A stretch of 64,000 nucleotides of DNA from Podarcis erhardii (lineage: Eukaryota): assembly GCA_964252035.1 (NCBI GenBank), contig OZ176205.1; one strand, written 5' to 3'. The notes below the pieces were generated by a model. The model was given only the letters and a program-made list of their open reading frames with translations. It ran no database searches and was not told the DNA's origin. The translations under genes were made by a program, and so were the position numbers. Shown here piece after piece: positions 5,156 through 58,350 of this stretch; position 1 is the stretch's first letter; each line of letters opens with the position of its first letter.

Positions 5156-5673
5156 CTGGTCTTCTTGGGTCTGGCTTTGGGGGGAGACTCCGAGTTGCTC
5201 TTCTTCTCTTTAGGCTCCTTTGGGACTTTGGGCTCCCGAGGCTTTCTGGGTTTCTTTGCCCCCTCCTGCTTGGGCTCCTTGGCCTTCTTAGGCTCCTTGG
5301 GCTTTTTGGGTTCTTTTGGTTCCTTAGGCTCTCTCTTTCTCTTTGGTTTGGCTTCTCTTTCACCCCCTGGTTCCTGCTGCCCCAGCTCTTTTTTCTTCCG
5401 TTTCTTCTTCACCCCAGTGCCCCCACCCCTGTTGTCCTGCATCCCATTAAGGGATGTCACCATGTTCTGCACAATCTCATCGGGCACCTCAACAGGCACC
5501 ACATCCTGCTGGTCCTTCTGGGCCAGGCTCACGCTGGCCAAGTTGGAGATTGTCACCAGGTCATGCAAATCTTCCTGATCTGTGCTGTCCGCAAAAGGGG
5601 ACTGTGGCTTGCATTCAAAGGTGATGGAGGCATCAGACATTGGGGAATGACTCAGCACATTAAAATTTGGCAG
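5156..5673 (-). CDS. CHD6: CHD6 exon 3 (second coding exon, 518 nt): N-terminal Lys/Glu/Pro-rich region of chromodomain-helicase-DNA-binding protein 6
   Basis: Translation LPNFNVLSHSPMSDA...GGGTGVKKKRKKKE...EAKPKRKREPKEPKEPKK...GAKKPRKPRE matches the vertebrate CHD6 N-terminus as I recall it. Acceptor TTTGCAG|CTG (phase 0) and donor AG|GTGGGT (phase 2). Confidence 0.96.
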
Positions 5674-15971: not shown

Positions 15972-16169
15972 AGATAGGTAGCCGTGTTGGTCTGCCATGG
16001 TCAAAACAAAATAAAAAAATTCCTTCCAGTAGCACCTTAAAGACCAACTGGGTTAGTTCTAGGTATGAGCTTTCGTGTGCATGCACATGGTATCTGAAGA
16101 AGTGTGCATGCACACGAAAGCTCATACCTAGAACTAACCCAGTTGGTCTTTAAGGTGCTACTGGAAGGA

Positions 16170-19530: not shown

Positions 19531-19563
19531 CTGTTTTTCTTTCTTCTGTATTTTCATTATCAT
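19531..19563 (-). CDS. CHD6: CHD6 exon 2 coding part (MIMKIQKKEKQ); full exon 19586-19531 including 23 nt of 5' UTR
   Basis: ATG at 19563-19561; 11 codons match the CHD6 N-terminus (human MKMKIQKKEKQ). Acceptor TTTTTACAG|AAG, donor CAG|GTTGGC. Phase 0 joins exon 3 in frame. Confidence 0.93.
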
Positions 19564-19802
19564 CAAATTTGGGGTGTATATTACTTCTGTAAAAACACAA
19601 GACAAAAAGGTCATGTTAACACTGAAAGCACACAAGAACTGCTTGTAAAGTATTTTTAATACAGCACCCTCTCTAAAGAGCAGTGACACACTCAGATATA
19701 AGTCCTGCTCAAAAATACTCTGTATTACTCAAGAAGGAAGGGCCTTTTGGAGTCTAAACAGATAACCCTGTGGCACTGATTTACATGACTAGGAGCCATA
19801 CA

Positions 19803-36523: not shown

Positions 36524-36871
36524 GGGATGCGGGTGGCACTGTGGGTTAAACCACAGAGCCTAGGGCTTGCCGATCTGAAGGTGGCCGGTTCGAATCCCCG
36601 CAATAGGGTGAGCTCCCGTTGCTCGGTCCCTGCTCCTGCCAACCTAGCAGTTCGAAAGCATGTCAAAGTGCAAGTGTACATAGATACCACTCTGGCAGGA
36701 AGGTAAAAGGCGTTTCCGTGCACTGCTCTGGTTCACCAGAAGCGGCTTAGTCATGCTGGTGACATGACCTGGAAGCTGTATGCCGGCTCCCTCAGCCAGT
36801 AAAGCGGGATGAGCGCCGCAACCCCAGAGTCATTCACGACTGGACCTAACAGTCAGATGTCCCTTTACCTT
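36524..36871 (+). mobile_element. Sauria SINE
   Basis: A box TGGCACTGTGG, B box GGTTCGAATCC, tail CCCTTTACCTT; 13-bp TSD TACATTGCTTTGG (36511-36523; 36872-36884). Confidence 0.93.
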
Positions 36872-36935
36872 TACATTGCTTTGGGGTGCTTCATGGGAAG
36901 CAAATCATTAATATAATTAATAATTAATAAGAATA

Positions 36936-40800: not shown

Positions 40801-40926
40801 ACGTTTACTATGAAATATGCTGCTCTTTGGAATTCTTAGTAACTTAGTAACTTTTCAGCTTTAAGTGAGACTATCATAAGACCTCAAGGACAATATCCAT
40901 ATATATATATATATATATATATATAT

Positions 40927-41980
40927 GCTTTCGTAGATTTTCACGGGTACAGGAATGCAGGTTTTGGCGTCCTCGGGTGTCTTCCCGTGTAAAAGTTGGG
41001 GTGTCTAGGCGACGTTTCGACGAGGTCTCACTCGTCATCTTCAGGCTGGTGCTTTCGGCTTCTTGTTACTGGAACAGAGCAGGATCTCAGTGTTTGAGTT
41101 CCTATAAATACTGTAGAGGGGGTGTGGTGTATAGCCTCCAATGTTCTGGGCAGAGAGGAAGTTCCCAGGCTAGTGTGCCTTTTCTTCTTTTGTTCCTTAA
41201 TTACTTGAGAGATATCTTGAGTGATTTCTTGAGTGATATCCTGAGTACCACTTAGGTGGGTCATTAGGTGTGGATTAGTTGTTAAAGTCTTTGTGTCTTG
41301 ACCTCTTGAACTTTGTGAAGAGTTTTCCTGAGAAGATGGCTGTACTGTACTTAGTTGTGCTCTGGCTTGGCTTCGTGTATAGGGGCGAGCTGTGGTTTTG
41401 TGGCTTGTGTCAGCCAGATCTGTGTAGGGATTGCAGGGGGGTGCAGCATCCGGAGGTGCCACCATGGATTGGCTACTGGATGGTGTCTGTAATTCATCTG
41501 TGGAGAGGGTCTGGGTTTGGGTCTGGTGTGGTTGATTGGTGTTGGCGTTCTGTGTGCCTCTGGATCTGGTGTCAGTTTTTGTGGGGAGGGCTAATTTCCA
41601 GATGTCTGGCAAGCGGGATGTGTCGTCACGCTTGTTCATGTTGTGAGGGTGTTTCTCTATCTCGATGGCTTCCATGATTATTCTCTTGTGGTGATGTTCC
41701 GTGTTAAAGAGCAATTTGGAATCTGCAAAATTAATTTCGTGTCCTGTTTCTTTCATGTGTTGGAAAAGAGAGGAAGTTTTTTCTTCTTTTTTGACGGCAT
41801 TCTTGTGTTCTGCGATACGTGCATTTATTCGTCTGTTTGTTTGTCCAATGTACGTGGCTGGGCAGACTTTGCAGGGTATTTCATAGATCCCTTGGTTTTC
41901 CAACTGGATTTTATCCTTGGGGTTTCTGAGGATATTGGCTATTTTTTGGTTGGTGCAAAAGGCTGTTTTGATATTGTGTT
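40927..41980 (-). mobile_element. 5'-truncated Penelope-like retroelement: GIY-YIG endonuclease region plus terminal repeat, inserted in a (TA)n tract
   Basis: Stop-free frame with GIYEIPCKVC-(4 aa)-YIGQT.R...RIAEH...QH...RIIMEAIEI...NMNKRDD, i.e. GIY-YIG motifs plus the PLE CCHH residues. Stop TGA at 41030-41028. (TA)n at 40899-40926 and 41981-42002. Confidence 0.93.
41005..41052 (-). ncRNA. Minimal type I hammerhead ribozyme motif (PLE type), in the CHD6 sense orientation
   Basis: Minus strand GCACCAGC-CUGAAGA-U-GACGAG(UGAGAC)CUCGUC-GAAA-CG-UC|-GCCUAG: intact core, 6-bp stem II, palindromic ACGU minimal stem III, GUC cleavage triplet (cut between 41011 and 41010). Stem I has only 2 contiguous canonical pairs. 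Confidence 0.75.
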
Positions 41981-44300
41981 TATATATATATATATATATA
42001 TAAAAAATACTACTACCCCTGTCCACACACCAGGAACCCACATTTGCATTTGTGTGTGTGTATTTCAATTTTCGTTTTTATTTAATTGCATTGCTTTTCT
42101 TTATTCTTGTATGCCACTGAAGTATAGGTTCTTGCTTAAATCATTAAAAAGCTTTTCTTTGAAAAAATATGTGTACTACAGATTTTCCACATTTTTAAGT
42201 ATGCAAATGGATATAATATGCAATATATTGAGTTGTATACAGATTCAAAAATAGTTTAATATTTTGGTTACAATCATAGCACCTGGTGCTCTATCATAAT
42301 GGATATATGTTGGTTTATAGTAACTCTGAACATTGTATGTATAAAACATAACCATAAAACCAATTTCCTGCTGATCCTTAAGTCAGTACTCTGTTTAAAA
42401 TTACACACGTTCAGTTCCTGAGTTTCGCTGTTAAACGCAGCAATGCCTTCTACACCTGCACAATAATGTGAAGACAGTTTTCCTTTTATAGCAAAGGCTG
42501 TAGCTTTGGTTTGTTCACAACGACATTTTCTGTGCAAACCCTCCCACCCCCCGGCAGTAGCAGAGGAACACAGTGTGAACAGTTCGGCAGACTGCACTAG
42601 CTGCTCATTCATGGTAACTCGGGTTTCTGGCAGTGTTCACTAACCTAGTACCCTCCAGCTGTTTGGGATGACAACTTGGGCGTGCTGGCTGAGGCTGAGA
42701 GGAGTTGAAGTCCAAAACAGCTGGAGGGCACCAGATTGGCAAAGACTGACTTAGAGCAGACTTCTTGTTTGAGCACAGCCATCTAAAGCTCAATGACGTA
42801 TACTTTAATTCAAGAAGAAACCTAGCAGAATATGTGTTTATTACACTTCTAATGTTTTTAAGTAATCAACATATTTCTTTGAACAGCAACCAATGTACTG
42901 TTTGTGCACTGATCGCCAATAATTTGTTTTCCTGGAGGGGCAGAGGACTTTTATTTCCTCTTACTTAAAAGTGAGTTCTATCAACAAATAATTTATACTA
43001 AAACTAATTTATACAAAACTACAGGAAAAAGAGGAGGCTATTTTGTGGGAAGCAGTCCAAACAGGCCAACCATATTCTGTAGAGTAACTTTAAATGTGTC
43101 TGAGACTGATGAATCCGTAATCAATGGCTTTGGAAAATCACTAGACTTGTTGCAGACAGGCAGACAAGTCCCATTGGCATTTAGCATCGGGATGGCAAAG
43201 TCAAAAAAAGCCAGACGGCTACCAGCTGAATATTCAGCTCCATGAGGACACACATGAATAAAGACAGGAATGGACTACAGCACTACTGCTGCTACCAGAA
43301 CTCAGTTAATGCAGTTGAGAACTGAGTTTACTGACCAGCCCTCTGCTAAAGGTGCTGTAGCCTGCAAACAGTGTATATAACAATCCAGCATGCAGACATT
43401 ACCTTTGGTTTTAACAGTGCCCTCCAAGGAAGCTCTACAGAGAATCATCAACCCCTATTGCTGCAACAAATTCAGACTAAGACTAAAGAAACTAATATTT
43501 GGAACCATAATAACTAGTGGCAGATCTGAAAAAGCTAGTAGTGATAGTTACTAGCTAGATGCCCTTAGAAAGGGCTGAGACAAATACATAGGAACAAAAA
43601 GCCTGAGGAAGAATTATGAGGAATTTGAGAGCTTGCTTGCTATTTTGTGACATTTGGGTTGGTTCTAATAATGGTATTGCCCAGCTATAGTTTTTGGAAT
43701 CATATAAGATTGCCTCTCAATTTGGAGGTTCCATTTCATTGTTGTGGCTTACAGGGACATCACTGGCTATGTGCTGGCAGAACATCATCTGCTGGAGAGC
43801 ATGAGTGGGATAGGGCTGCTGTCCTCAAGTCCCACTTTTGAGTTTCCCATAAGCATCTATTGCTTCAAGGTATTTTATGGGACATGGCCAATAAATGGGA
43901 TAAATAATAATAATAAATCAATCTAGCTGTGGGAAAGAGGTGGGTGGACTAGATAGGCCTTTGGTCTGATTGGGCTTTTCTTATGCTCTTACTGCACTAC
44001 TAGGTGGTCAATACGTTATCATGCCCAAATCCTTTGCCAGCAGCAGCCCTGATTTCCTCCAAAAACAGCTGTTATCAATTTCTCGACCTCAAGCAACTGT
44101 TGAGTGTTGAAATTCCAAGTGTACAATCCCTCAGGCAAAAGTGTCCCTTAATCCTATTCGTGAGTTATACATACTTCACCACCACCAACACCACCATCTT
44201 TTTAAAAAAGAGTAACAATCAAGTTATTTCGCAAATAAAATAATAATAATAAATCAGCAACGTACTCCTACACTGCAAAGTAGGAAGGCTATTTTTACCT

Positions 44301-44676
44301 AAAGGTAAAGGTAAAGGTAAAGGGACCCCTGACAATTAAGTCCAGTTGCAAACGACTCTGGGGTTGCGGTGCTCATCTCACTTTACAGGCCGAGGGAGCC
44401 GGCATTTGTCCGCTTCCACAGACAGTTTTTCCAGGTCATGTGGCCAGCATGACTAAGCTGCTTCTGGCGAAACCAGAGCAGCGTATGGAAATGCCGTTTA
44501 CCTTCCCACCAGTGCAGTACCTATTTATCTACTTGCACTGCGTGCTTTCGAACTGCTAGGTTGGCAGGAGCTGGGACCAAACAACAGGAGCTCACTCCGT
44601 CGCAGGGATTCGAACCGCTGACCTTTCGATCGGCAAGCCCAAGCAGCTCAGTGGTTTAACCCACAGCGCCACCCGC
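44301..44676 (-). mobile_element. Sauria SINE
   Basis: (ACCTTT)n tail, full body and B box on the minus strand; 5' end slightly truncated; no clear TSD. Confidence 0.9.
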
Positions 44677-45833
44677 TAGAGGCCCTTAAAATCAAGGCTG
44701 CCTCCAAACCTCAAACACCATCAATCTGACAAAACCTATGAGGCAGTATGGAATACGACACTCCTCCAAGTTCAAGGTCACACATGTAAGATCAGGCATG
44801 TGTATTTTCCAAGTCTGAGGATGCAGGACCCATTCTGCTGTAAACCCACACTTTACACCTTGCAAGGCATTCTACTGAATTTAGCACAACTCACGGAAGT
44901 GTGAAAAATCAAGCACGTTATTAAGTGTTTGCTTTAAAACCACAATCCTTCAATATATGACAACCTGATCTATATTTATAAAGATTCACCTTGAAATCTC
45001 GTTAAAGCTGTTCCTTACTACCGCCTGAGCCTCGTATAAGATGGAGGGGAAACAGCCTGCATATAAAAAGTCATTAAAGTTTGATGAGGGCTCATTGAGT
45101 CAGCATATTTCTAAACTTTATTCAAGTGACATAACAAATTGCACTAAGCTTAAGGTTTAACACAGGTTGAAATAACGTTAATTTCAAGTAGATTTTTTTA
45201 AAGCACTATCGTTTTTCTTCATTGAAAACTACCATTCATGTCTTTTAAAAGAATTATTCAATATTTTATTCACCCTTCAGGTGCACAGCAAAACCATGGG
45301 CATAATTCAACAAGAAGGTCTCCTATGCGAGCTCTGTTGCTCTTGCATATCTCCCATTCACTTCAAGGGGGAAAGCACATGAGATCATTCTCCTGGACTG
45401 TGCCCTTTATGTTCTGAGAGGCTTAGATATCACAGTCCTCTGAGCTCCAAGCACCCATTGAAGCAGGCGAACAGTGGTGGGTCAGCACTTGATTGTCTTC
45501 GCATGCAGGAGAAATGCCTAACTCACTGAGGTTTAAGATCCATCAGCTACTATCACCTGGATTAGACAGCCAATCAAAGCCGTTCCCAGGGTGTGGCCAC
45601 TGTCACATGCTGACAGTTTGCAGGGGCCACAGGTGAAAGCTGAGTGTAGGGTGGGGAGCAATGGTGGACAAATTACCCTAGAAAGAGCATGACGTGCCCC
45701 CTAGCATTGGTACTACCCCTCCACAAACACCCCAGTCCTGTAAGAAAGAAGCACTATGACACATTTCATAGGTTACCTTTTAAACACAGCAAACCACAAT
45801 GTGTTAAGTTTTGCATAGTGTACATTAAGAGCA

Positions 45834-46197
45834 AAAAAAAGGTAAAGGTACCCCTGACTGTTAGGTCCAGTCGCGGACGACTCTGGGGTTGCGCGCTCAT
45901 CTCGCTCTATAGACCGAGGAAGCCAGTGTTTGTCCGCAGACAGCTTCTGGGTCATGTGGCTAGCATGACTAAGCCACTTCTGGTGAACCACAGCAGCGCA
46001 CGGAAACGCCGTTTACCTTTCCGCCAGAGCGGTACCTATTTATCTACTTGCACTTTGACGTGCTTTCGAACTGCTAGGTGGGCAGGAGCTGGGACCGAAC
46101 AATGGGAGCTCACCCTGTCGCGGGGATTCGAACTGCTGACCTTCTGATCAGCAAGCCCTAGGCTCTGTGGTTTAGACCACAGTGCCACCCACGTCCC
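45834..46197 (-). mobile_element. Sauria SINE
   Basis: Full length; 12-bp TSD ACATTAAGAGCA (45822-45833; 46198-46209). Confidence 0.93.
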
Positions 46198-56849: not shown

Positions 56850-58350
56850 GTTGCAGGAATGCACATGACTCATGGCCGTATTGTGGATGGATCTGCAAAA
56901 GAGGCAGGTGGGCTGGACTGTGCGTTGTGTGTGTGTGCGCGTTTCTGTGCGTGAGCGCCTCGGAGGGAGGGCTGGGGGGGGGGCGAGAGAAAGCAAACTG
57001 CAGTGCGTGGGACTAGACCCAAGGGGAGTCGCAGATGGGGTTGGACGGCGCATCCTCCCGATCGCCACCCATGCAAAACAGTGGGCAGGCGCAGAGAACT
57101 TCTGGGGGTGAGAGGGTCAGCGGCAGCAGCCCCAGCCATAGCCCACAGCCTGCCTGCACACAGGGGGAGAGGGAGGAGCTGCAGATCATCTTCCCTCCCT
57201 CCCCCATCCCCCGCTCGCTCTCCTCCCCGAGCCTTGCGCTTTAAGGGGGAAGCTTTGCGCTGCAAGGGGAACCTGCGGGGCATCCCTGCTCGGCTCCACA
57301 TGGGCATCCTCTCCCTCCTTGCAACTCTGCGCAAGGGCACCATCACACGCAGCACCCCGTCCCCCGGCGCCCAGCTCTGCTTCCCAAGGACAGAGCCTCG
57401 CCAACGCCATGACAGTGTCTGAGAGGAGAAACTAAGCGCTTGGCAAGACCCCCCCCTCCCCGCCCGCCCGCCCGCCGGCCGAGCCCGGGCCGCCTGACCA
57501 GCCGCCGGCTCCTTGGCCCCTGCCGCCTGCCCTGCCCGGCGAGCGCAGAGTTCATTCATAGGCTGGCCCCGGGCCGCCTTGCGCACCCCGCGCACCCCTC
57601 ACTCGCGCACGGCGCGCCAATAAAAAGTTCAGAGCCCAACTTACCTAAAATGGCTCCTGCAGCAGCCAAAATACAAACAGCTATTATTTGGTGAAGTTTA
57701 GCCCAGACACCCTGCAAGGACAGCCTAGCCTGGCCCCGGCACGCCCCCGCGCTGCAGCCACTGGCCACCCGCAGCCCCCCGGCGCCTGCCATTGGAGAGG
57801 CGGCCCGTCAGCCAAGCGCAGCCCGCTCCAAGCTTGGCTGCAGCGCGCTTATTGCTAGCTCCATTGTGCTCCTATTTGCATTGATGTGATCGCTGCCGGG
57901 ATTGGCTGTGGCGAGGACCGAGCATTCCCCCCCCCCCCGCACCCTCCCCGCAATTCCTTTTGCCTCCCGGATCTGCAGCCCCGGTCCTTCTCTGCCCTGC
58001 CTCCCGCCCCCTTCCAGCTCTCCAGCTCGGTTGCCCAACGCAACTGTAGCTGCAACTTTCCAAAGGCTAGCAGAGGAGAGAAGGATTTCGCCCCCCACTC
58101 CCGTATCCTCCAATCAAGGGGTTTTTTACTTACTTCAGCCAGCATTAAAAGCGGAGGAGAAGAAGGGAGGGGAGGAGAAGCGGGGGAGAACCTCTCCCCC
58201 TTTGCATTCCACGTCTTTGCTCGCTTTTCATGTCCCGGATGTGAGATTTCCTGCATTTAAAGCACAGTGTCTGGAGGTGGAATGTGCAACCTCCGAGCGG
58301 GACGATGCAGGTCTTTTTTGTCGCGTGTGGGAAGGAGAAATGGGCATAAT
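56850..58350. promoter_or_regulatory. CHD6: CpG island / CHD6 promoter region
   Basis: Sharp rise in GC and CpG content relative to the CpG-depleted background. GC boxes at 57460-57476, CCAAT boxes (minus strand) at 57791-57795 and 57901-57905, octamer at 57874-57881, YY1-like AAAATGGC at 57647-57654. Boundaries estimated by eye. Confidence 0.85.
57645..57770 (-). other. CHD6: Candidate CHD6 exon 1 (5' UTR); 5' boundary unknown
   Basis: Consensus donor TAG|GTAAGT (intron starts at 57644) inside the only CpG island, on the CHD6 strand. TSS position is inferred. Confidence 0.65.

What the first reader, a model, noticed from the sequence alone, without database searches (positions are those of the whole stretch)
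41005..41052. Hammerhead ribozyme motif in the sense strand of the CHD6 pre-mRNA (intron 1)
Seen: the minus strand reads GCACCAGC CUGAAGA U GACGAG(UGAGAC)CUCGUC GAAA CG UC|GCCUAG, with a complete catalytic core, a perfect 6-bp stem II and a GUC cleavage triplet. It lies on the strand that transcribes CHD6, about 16.6 kb after the exon 1 donor. Known: Penelope-like elements carry minimal type I hammerheads whose palindromic stem III (here ACGU) favours cleavage as dimers. Inference: each CHD6 transcript passes through a potential self-cleaving site, which could cut the nascent RNA before exon 2 and lower CHD6 output in carriers. It may instead be tolerated because the copy is single and stem I is weak (2 contiguous pairs, extendable only with a bulge).
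Basis: partly seen in the sequence, partly recalled or inferred. Interest (0 to 1): 0.72.

Follow-up and report, generated by a model that had tools for sequence, protein, structure and literature searches.

The report
Lone Penelope retrotransposon hammerhead in CHD6 intron
The hammerhead ribozyme motif is real, but it is the standard tail module of a truncated copy of a very abundant lizard Penelope-like retrotransposon that landed in the first CHD6 intron, and as a single copy it most likely cannot cut the CHD6 transcript.

Summary
The minus strand at 41054-41001 carries a hammerhead core: CUGAAGA, one extra U, a 6-bp helix II, GAAA, the palindrome ACGU, and a cut site after GUC at 41011|41010. 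A strict descriptor expects about 0.003 such motifs per shuffled window. The motif recurs in related elements of other squamates, with compensatory changes in helix II and helix I.

It is not a free-standing host ribozyme. It lies about 55 nt from the canonical 3' end of a 5'-truncated Penelope-like element (41980-40926, minus strand). That copy has a GIY-YIG endonuclease ORF remnant and (TA)n on both sides, and it belongs to a family with roughly thousands of copies.

Every feature matches the published "min-HHR" of metazoan Penelope-like elements (Cervera and de la Peña 2014). Single copies of that class showed no detectable cleavage in vitro, and dimers cleaved only weakly.

The gene context holds. 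CHD6 runs on the minus strand and the motif is sense, in the intron between a 5' exon (donor at 57645) and the ATG exon (19586-19531).

The proposed cutting of CHD6 RNA is unsupported. The window holds no second copy, helix III cannot form in a monomer, and family RNA reads show no pile-up of ends.

This scan already holds 147 notes with the words hammerhead and Penelope in this genome. The finding is an ordinary new member of a known kind.

The parts
41001..41054 (-). Minimal type I hammerhead motif (min-HHR). CUGAAGA 41044-41038; bulged U 41037; helix II 41036-41031 / 41024-41019; GAAA 41018-41015; palindrome ACGU 41015-41012; C17 at 41011; predicted cut 41011|41010; helix I G41046-C41045 with G41010-C41009.
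   Evidence: Sequence. Descriptor scan and shuffles. Covariation. Covariance-model hit at 79 bits (this site is one of the model's own rows).
40955..41980 (-). 5'-truncated Penelope-like element copy: end of the RT-EN linker, GIY-YIG endonuclease, an A/C-rich open tail, the hammerhead, and a 55-nt 3' end.
   Evidence: About 99% identical to the longer copy L001 from another run. Homologues carry RVT_1, HTH_animal and GIY-YIG. Word depth is 3e5-7e5 against about 97 on the flanks.
41028..42068 (-). Open frame of 346 codons. The GIY-YIG endonuclease remnant with the CCHH motif lies at about 41891-41620. The stop codon UGA at 41030-41028 is the first three bases of hammerhead loop 2. The first ~29 codons are flank and (TA)n, not element.
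   Evidence: ORF; Pfam GIY-YIG E 9.7e-4, 19.8 bits, below the 22.6 cutoff; homologues down to E 5.6e-200.
40926..40954 (-). Extra 28-29 nt tail between the canonical 3' end of the element (40955) and the (TA)n.
   Evidence: Absent from L001. Loose ends of DNA contigs and RNA reads turn into (TA)n at 40955. Tails of 30-40 bp are described for these elements (PMC8557442).
41981..42002 (.). (TA)n microsatellite flanking the 5' side of the insertion.
40894..40925 (.). (TA)n microsatellite flanking the 3' side of the insertion.
   Evidence: (TA)n is a known preferred target of Penelope-like elements (PMC8557442).
57645..57720 (-). Putative non-coding CHD6 exon 1 end inside a CpG island, with donor AG|GTAAGT (exon ends 57645). 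The start of the exon was not determined.
   Evidence: GC 0.56 at 56-58 kb; sequence. No RNA evidence was obtained.
19531..19586 (-). CHD6 exon with the start codon (ATG at 19563-19561, reading MIMKIQKKEKQ), preceded by a pyrimidine-rich acceptor ...ACAG| and followed by donor CAG|GT.
   Evidence: The match to the CHD6 N-terminus rests on my own knowledge for this short exon.
5158..5673 (-). The next CHD6 coding exon (172 codons).
   Evidence: Searched alone by reference. Hits named chromodomain-helicase-DNA-binding protein 6 (Castor E 1.2e-32, Rousettus E 3.8e-30) and 70-98% identical squamate fragments.

Best explanation
The motif is the minimal hammerhead (min-HHR) in the 3'-terminal module of a Penelope-like retrotransposon. 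The element belongs to the canonical group with a C-terminal endonuclease. It has a Penelope/Poseidon-like linker and lacks the extra Neptune-type zinc finger.

This copy is a 5'-truncated, non-autonomous insertion of about 1.03 kb plus a 28-nt tail. It landed in a (TA)n microsatellite in the first large intron of CHD6, in the same orientation as the gene.

In complete, tandemly arranged elements, two copies of the motif are thought to pair through the ACGU palindrome. That would build a shared helix III (a double hammerhead), cut after GUC, and so process element RNA. This step is inferred from the literature, not shown here.

A lone copy cannot build helix III, and here helix I has only 2 pairs. 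In the CHD6 pre-mRNA the motif is therefore most likely a silent passenger that is spliced out with the intron.
For: Shown here:
- The motif is present and far beyond chance.
- It sits at the end of an ORF whose homologues carry RVT_1, HTH_animal and GIY-YIG domains in lizards and snakes.
- A copy about 99% identical, with a longer 5' part, exists in another run and also ends in (TA)n.
- The same motif at the same place occurs in Phrynocephalus, Ahaetulla and two Logan contigs. The core, the bulged U and GAAACGUC are invariant. Helix II is 100% paired, with 3 pairs changed on both sides. One helix I pair switches G-C to A-U.
- Element word depth is 3e5-7e5 against about 97 for the flanks, which suggests roughly thousands of copies.
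- There is only one copy of this motif in the 64-kb window.
- The monomer fold shows only helix II, and the double-hammerhead fold is thermodynamically disfavoured.
- RNA reads of the family show no clustering of ends at the cut site.

From the literature:
- The same paper reports no detectable cleavage by single motifs and low cleavage by dimers and trimers.
- PMC8557442 describes (TA)n targets and 30-40 bp tails.
- PMC6765202 summarises the dimer model.
Against: - No cleavage assay exists for this sequence.
- The RNA reads came from a related species (organism F), not the source species, and none covered the CHD6 intron flanks. Cleavage of the CHD6 transcript itself was therefore not tested.
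- Nearest-neighbour energies ignore tertiary contacts and protein chaperones.
- The family is transcribed, so trans partners exist in the cell.
- Pfam GIY-YIG alone is below its curated cutoff. Membership rests on the homologues.
Confidence: 0.86

Rival explanations
1. One reading: the sense-strand motif self-cleaves the nascent CHD6 pre-mRNA, alone or paired in trans with abundant Penelope transcripts. Transcription would then end before exon 2, and carriers would make less CHD6.
For: - The orientation is sense and the position is intronic, 21.4 kb before the ATG exon.
- The core is intact and identical to the expressed family copies.
- The family is transcribed, mainly in sense if the library is of the usual stranded kind.
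- A 2026 preprint (10.64898/2026.07.22.740005) reports depletion of hammerhead retrozyme sequences from introns in Xenopus, which hints that genic copies can be harmful.
Against: - Helix III is impossible in a monomer, and helix I has 2 bp.
- No cis partner exists in the window.
- A 4-bp trans helix is very weak, with pair probability about 3e-5.
- Published single min-HHRs are inactive and dimers are slow (PMC4209133).
- Family RNA shows no pile-up of ends.
- The scan's index holds 147 notes with these words in this genome, and several of the eight shown describe intronic copies, some sense to the host gene. These are unchecked notes.
Confidence: 0.04
2. The conserved fold is kept mainly for something other than self-cleavage. 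It could be the 5' leader of transcripts that start just upstream of the motif, or a handle for the element's reverse transcriptase at the 3' module. On this reading the hammerhead core is a by-product or a parasite of the element. In the CHD6 intron it would be equally inert.
For: - A 92-nt unitig spans exactly 40955-41046.
- RNA loose ends at 41045-41047 show copies that begin right at the 5' edge of the motif.
- Earlier notes of this scan report the same fixed start (s1-234774).
- PMC4209133 and PMC8557442 both leave non-cleavage roles, or parasitism by the hammerhead, open.
Against: - All core positions needed only for catalysis are invariant across diverged copies.
- Penelope elements of plants and fungi carry fully active hammerheads (PMC4209133).
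Confidence: 0.09
3. A chance match to a short, degenerate pattern.
For: The loose pattern alone is common: 18 matches against 7 expected. Rfam models do not hit.
Against: The strict descriptor expects 0.003 per window. The motif is conserved with covariation at the same place of homologous elements in other genera.
Confidence: 0.01

Closest known systems
min-HHR of metazoan Penelope-like elements (Cervera and de la Peña 2014, PMC4209133; dimer cleavage per Lünse et al. 2017, cited in PMC6765202 and not readable here)
   Same: Type I topology. An unpaired nucleotide between A9 and 10.1. The G10.1-C11.1 pair. No loop 3, with palindromic 15.2-16.2 (C-G) so that ACGU can pair with a second copy. 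A 6-bp helix II and a very short helix I. Location in the terminal region next to the RT-EN ORF.
   Different: Nothing essential. This is a lizard family. The published survey named turtles and snakes among reptiles. Here the ORF stop codon lies inside the motif.
Double hammerheads of newt satellite 2 and avocado sunblotch viroid RNAs (Forster et al. 1988, cited in PMC4209133)
   Same: An unstable helix III, so that activity needs two copies.
   Different: Those have a 1-2 bp helix III with a small loop, longer helix I, and loop-loop contacts. They occur as tandem repeats, whereas this copy is alone.
Conserved intronic hammerheads of amniote genes (Rfam HH9 and HH10)
   Same: The motif is sense to the host gene and inside an intron.
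   Different: Those are stable monomeric ribozymes conserved at orthologous sites. This one gives no Rfam hit, belongs to a young high-copy transposon, and may be absent at this site in a sister species (weak evidence).
Non-LTR retrozymes of animals (PMC7229834; bioRxiv 10.64898/2026.07.22.740005)
   Same: Type I hammerheads related to Penelope terminal repeats.
   Different: Retrozymes are short tandem units without an ORF that give circular RNAs. This is a single truncated copy of an autonomous element with an ORF remnant.

Membership tests
Hammerhead ribozyme (general) | Core boxes C3-U4-G5-A6-N7-G8-A9 and G12-A13-A14, with A15.1-U16.1 and H17 at the cut site | tested here: met
   41044-41038, 41018-41015, and U41012-C41011. 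Invariant in 7 homologous copies. One extra U lies between A9 and 10.1.
Hammerhead ribozyme (general) | Three helices around the core, formed by one molecule | tested here: not met
   Helix II has 6 bp and helix I has 2 bp. Helix III would enclose 2 nt, so it cannot form in a monomer. The MFE fold has helix II only.
Hammerhead ribozyme (general) | Match to curated Rfam hammerhead models | tested here: not met
   No hit at gathering scores or at E<=10 on 4 kb and 141 nt. Probably because Rfam's hammerhead models include a helix III, which this class lacks (my inference; not checked against the models).
Hammerhead ribozyme (general) | Site-specific self-cleavage | not testable with these tools
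   Only indirect evidence: family RNA reads show no clustering of ends at 41010/41011.
Penelope-type min-HHR (PMC4209133) | [quoted passage not shown] | tested here: met
   U41037, present in all 7 copies.
Penelope-type min-HHR (PMC4209133) | G10.1-C11.1 pair and a long helix II with covariation | tested here: met
   G41036-C41019. Helix II is 100% paired, with 3 of 6 pairs changed on both sides.
Penelope-type min-HHR (PMC4209133) | No loop 3; palindromic 15.2-16.2 allowing a dimeric helix III | tested here: met
   A-C-G-U at 41015-41012, invariant.
Penelope-type min-HHR (PMC4209133) | Sits in the terminal region of a Penelope-like element | tested here: met
   55 nt from the canonical 3' end, directly after the EN-containing ORF.
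Penelope-like element, canonical C-terminal-EN type | GIY-YIG endonuclease with the CCHH motif | tested here: met
   Pfam E 9.7e-4, below the cutoff. Homologues carry GIY-YIG, and the pattern C-x2-C ... H ... H is visible in the ORF.
Penelope-like element, canonical C-terminal-EN type | Reverse transcriptase upstream of EN | tested here: not met
   Missing in this copy because of the 5' truncation at about 41980. Present in relatives P0006 and P0007 (RVT_1, HTH_animal).
Penelope-like element, canonical C-terminal-EN type | Pseudo-LTRs or partial tandem arrangement | tested here: not met
   Single truncated copy with no second motif in the window. An inverted pair is seen in Phrynocephalus locus L002.
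Neptune clade of Penelope-like elements | CX2-5CxxC zinc-finger-like linker before GIY-YIG | tested here: not met
   The RT-EN linker of P0001, P0006 and P0007 has no such cysteine cluster. The element is therefore Penelope/Poseidon-like rather than Neptune. No tree was built.
Host-gene regulatory intronic ribozyme | Conserved at the orthologous site independently of a transposon | tested here: inconclusive
   It is part of a young transposon. One contig of organism B joins 40874 to 42096 at single-copy depth, which may be an empty site, but the letters in between are unknown and the shorter side is 30 nt.

The most novel reading that the evidence does not exclude
The lone sense-strand motif is cut in vivo after pairing in trans, through ACGU plus chaperones, with the abundant transcripts of its own family. 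A young and possibly polymorphic insertion would then act as a weak co-transcriptional terminator of CHD6. The thousands of intronic sense copies would together form a transposon-dependent layer of host gene attenuation.
Probability: 0.04. Interest if true: 0.7.

Novelty: new member of a known kind. Interest (0 to 1): 0.15.

Why it matters
The direct value is small. It is one more copy of a ribozyme class described in 2014, in a genome where this scan has noted the class many times.

It is useful as a clean annotation. It fixes the CHD6 5' exon structure and strand in this window, and it shows the element's (TA)n target, tail and truncation. It also records that Rfam models miss this class, so Rfam-negative hammerhead cores next to GIY-YIG remnants should be read as Penelope modules.

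The open question it touches is whether min-HHRs cleave at all in vivo. That question is better addressed at the family level than at this locus.

Tried and rejected
- Rfam at gathering and at E<=10 gave no hammerhead hit. I rejected this as evidence against the motif, probably because Rfam's hammerhead models include a helix III that this class lacks (my inference).
- My first descriptor required helix II to start directly after A9 and found nothing. The extra U explains this, and the descriptor was corrected.
- A search for the CHD6 start as MK[MIL]K found nothing. The lizard reads MIMK, which one search found.
- My first double-hammerhead dot-bracket string was mis-nested and gave a nonsense energy. 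It was redone as a domain-swapped dimer.
- Lünse et al. 2017 (PMC5785218) is not held.
- The joint 40707->42118 in the source-species run has a 21-nt side. I did not take it as an empty allele.
- A>G and T>C excess in the RNA reads was considered as possible editing. I rejected this because the changes are near 100% and some are also in DNA of organism B, so they are subfamily or species differences.
- The CHD6 exons were searched or read one by one by reference.
The aligner prints a consensus line on its own.

Full report
**1. The observation**

The parts are:

- CUGAAGA at 41044-41038
- one unpaired U at 41037
- a perfect 6-bp helix II, 41036-41031 with 41024-41019, closed by a 6-nt loop
- GAAA at 41018-41015
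- C-G-U-C at 41014-41011
- a predicted cut between C41011 and G41010

Helix I has only two pairs, G41046-C41045 with G41010-C41009.

The loose text pattern is common in the window: 18 matches against about 7 expected. A strict descriptor is not. It required the core box, an optional one-base bulge, a helix II of at least 5 bp, GAAA, complementary 15.2/16.2, then U and H. It found two sites in the window, against a mean of 0.003 in 300 dinucleotide-preserving shuffles.

Rfam reports no hammerhead at gathering scores. It also reports none at E<=10 on a 4-kb or a 141-nt stretch.

**2. What surrounds it**

The motif overlaps the end of a 346-codon open frame on the same strand, 42068-41028. Its stop codon UGA (41030-41028) is the start of the helix II loop.

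The frame has a weak Pfam GIY-YIG match, E 9.7e-4 and below the curated cutoff. A word search is far clearer:

- a fragment 96% identical from a Logan contig
- fragments 59-94% identical from lizards and snakes (Podarcis, Phrynocephalus, Ahaetulla, Pseudonaja), carrying RVT_1, HTH_animal (PF26215) and GIY-YIG
- insect relatives 41-57% identical

The linker before GIY-YIG in the longer relatives has no CX2-5CxxC cysteine cluster. The element therefore looks like a Penelope/Poseidon-type Penelope-like element (PLE) rather than a Neptune-type one. I built no tree.

The Logan contig L001 is about 99% identical over about 1.03 kb. It extends further 5' into the RT-EN linker and also ends in (TA)n.

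The window copy starts abruptly at about 41980, directly after a (TA)11 run. It ends in a (TA)n run at 40925-40894. So it is a 5'-truncated copy inserted in a (TA)n microsatellite, a target preference described for these elements (PMC8557442).

Between the canonical 3' end (40955) and the (TA)n the window copy has 28-29 extra bases. L001 lacks them, and so do most copies: DNA and RNA loose ends turn into (TA)n at 40955. This matches the "tail" described in PMC8557442.

**3. Is the motif a conserved part of that element?**

Yes. The same motif lies at the same place, just after the endonuclease ORF, in five other loci:

- two Phrynocephalus loci, one holding an inverted pair
- one Ahaetulla locus
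- two further Logan contigs

In an ungapped 54-column alignment of seven copies (six distinct), the core boxes, the bulged U and GAAACGUCG never vary.

For the named structure, 92.6% of cells pair, against 20-59% when the partners are slid. Helix II is paired in every sequence, with three of its six pairs changed on both sides. In helix I, the second pair switches G-C to A-U, and the third is paired only in two sequences. The sample is small and the rows are related, so these counts support the fold but do not prove it.

**4. Comparison with the known class**

Cervera and de la Peña (PMC4209133) defined the min-HHR of metazoan Penelope-like elements by these traits:

- a conserved G10.1-C11.1 pair
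- palindromic 15.2-16.2, with or without a tiny loop 3
- a longer than usual helix II
- a short helix I (as short as 2 bp in Drosophila virilis)
- location in the terminal repeats of the element

All are met here. The same paper found such motifs in reptiles. It reports that a single motif gave no detectable self-cleavage. Dimeric and trimeric constructs cleaved weakly, mostly at non-physiological Mg2+. A later review states the same (PMC6765202). The motif is therefore a member of a known class.

**5. Gene context**

Stop-free stretches of the minus strand and the sequence itself show a 56-nt exon at 19586-19531. It has a good acceptor, an ATG at 19563 and a CAG|GT donor.

A 172-codon exon lies at 5673-5158. 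I searched that exon alone, by reference. It hits fragments named chromodomain-helicase-DNA-binding protein 6 (E 1e-32 and 4e-30) and squamate fragments 70-98% identical.

A CpG island lies at 56-58 kb.

Exon 1 has no RNA support here. "Intron 1" assumes there is no further 5' exon in between. I did not build or search a joined coding sequence.

The motif is thus sense to CHD6, about 21.4 kb before the ATG exon.

**6. Can it cut the CHD6 transcript?**

Four lines of evidence argue against it.

- **Monomer geometry.** In a monomer, A15.1 and U16.1 would enclose only two bases, so helix III cannot form. The predicted monomer fold contains helix II only.
- **No cis partner.** A covariance model built from the seven copies finds this site at 79 bits and nothing else above 13 bits on either strand of the window. 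There is no partner within 64 kb.
- **Dimer energetics.** For two molecules, the domain-swapped double hammerhead scores -19.1 kcal/mol against -29.4 for the best dimer fold. The helix III pairs have a probability of about 3e-5. These energies ignore tertiary contacts and proteins.
- **Reads**:
  - In contigs of the source species the element reaches word depths of 3e5-7e5, against about 97 on the flanks. This is a rough sign of thousands of copies, not a count.
  - Two bulk RNA runs of a related species (organism F) cover the element at depth 20-95 on both strands, more often with the first mate on plus.
  - Those RNA runs do not cover the unique flanks.
  - No variant is listed within the motif.
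  - No place is flagged where many molecules begin or end, so no pile-up at 41010/41011 was seen.
  - This is family-level evidence from another species. It does not test the CHD6 transcript itself.

**7. Other things seen in the reads**

A 92-nt unitig spans exactly 40955-41046. RNA reads have loose ends at 41045-41047. So some copies or transcripts begin right at the 5' edge of the motif. Earlier notes of this scan report the same fixed start in this genome.

One contig of organism B joins 40874 to 42096 at single-copy depth. This could be the empty site, but the evidence is weak.

**8. Verdict**

- The class assignment and the strand and intron context are supported.
- The proposed effect on CHD6 is unsupported and unlikely.
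- The scan's index already holds 147 notes with the words hammerhead and Penelope in this genome, some on intronic copies (unchecked notes).
- This is an ordinary new member of a known kind.

Noticed in passing
window 16094-16130 (+): A second min-HHR-type motif on the other strand: CUGAAGA, a bulged A, a 5-bp helix II, GAAA, and the palindrome AGCU. Helix I looks like 5 bp by eye. Its palindrome differs, so it could not pair with the motif at 41 kb.
   Followed up: partly
window 41030-41028; L005 905-907; L007 1329-1331: The element's ORF ends inside the hammerhead. In the window and L001 the stop is the UGA that opens loop 2. In L005 and L007 it is the UGA of the CUGA box, in another frame. 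This may simply reflect the T-poor, A/C-rich tail, in which the first stop codons appear only in the motif.
   Followed up: partly
window 40926-40954 (-): A 28-29 nt tail after the canonical 3' end. Its sequence resembles a stretch near the start of L001 (a GTGAA..CTACGAAA block), which suggests a template switch during insertion.
   Followed up: no
window 40955-41046 and RNA loose ends at 41045-41047: A 92-nt unitig and RNA reads that leave the element exactly at the 5' edge of the motif. They indicate mini-copies or transcripts made only of the hammerhead-to-3'-end module.
   Followed up: partly
window 42616-42763: An inverted repeat with 61-nt arms (70% complementary). It has very high copy depth and is transcribed in the related species. 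It gives sub-threshold miRNA-like hits (mir-5408, mir-727, E about 0.2). It looks like a MITE-type repeat.
   Followed up: no
proteins P0004, P0007, P0008, P0015: Penelope endonuclease fragments are embedded in database proteins named translin-associated factor X (Podarcis), P2Y purinoceptor 1 isoform X3 (Ahaetulla), acyl-CoA thioesterase 12 (Pseudonaja) and olfactory receptor 10A7-like (Erythrolamprus). These are gene-model errors or exonised insertions.
   Followed up: no
window 36529-36880, 44296-44676, 45821-46000: Copies of a SINE, in direct and inverted orientation (85-94% alike). The (GGTAAA)n-GGGACCCCTGAC start recalls, from memory, squamate Sauria SINEs.
   Followed up: no
L009 6942 (+), weevil Cylas formicarius: An insect relative of the endonuclease (42% identity) has nearby a min-HHR-like motif with a bulged A and the palindrome AGCU. 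This shows the same module across phyla.
   Followed up: no
window 41110-41103 (-): A TATA-like TATTTATA lies 64 nt upstream of the 5' edge of the motif.
   Followed up: no
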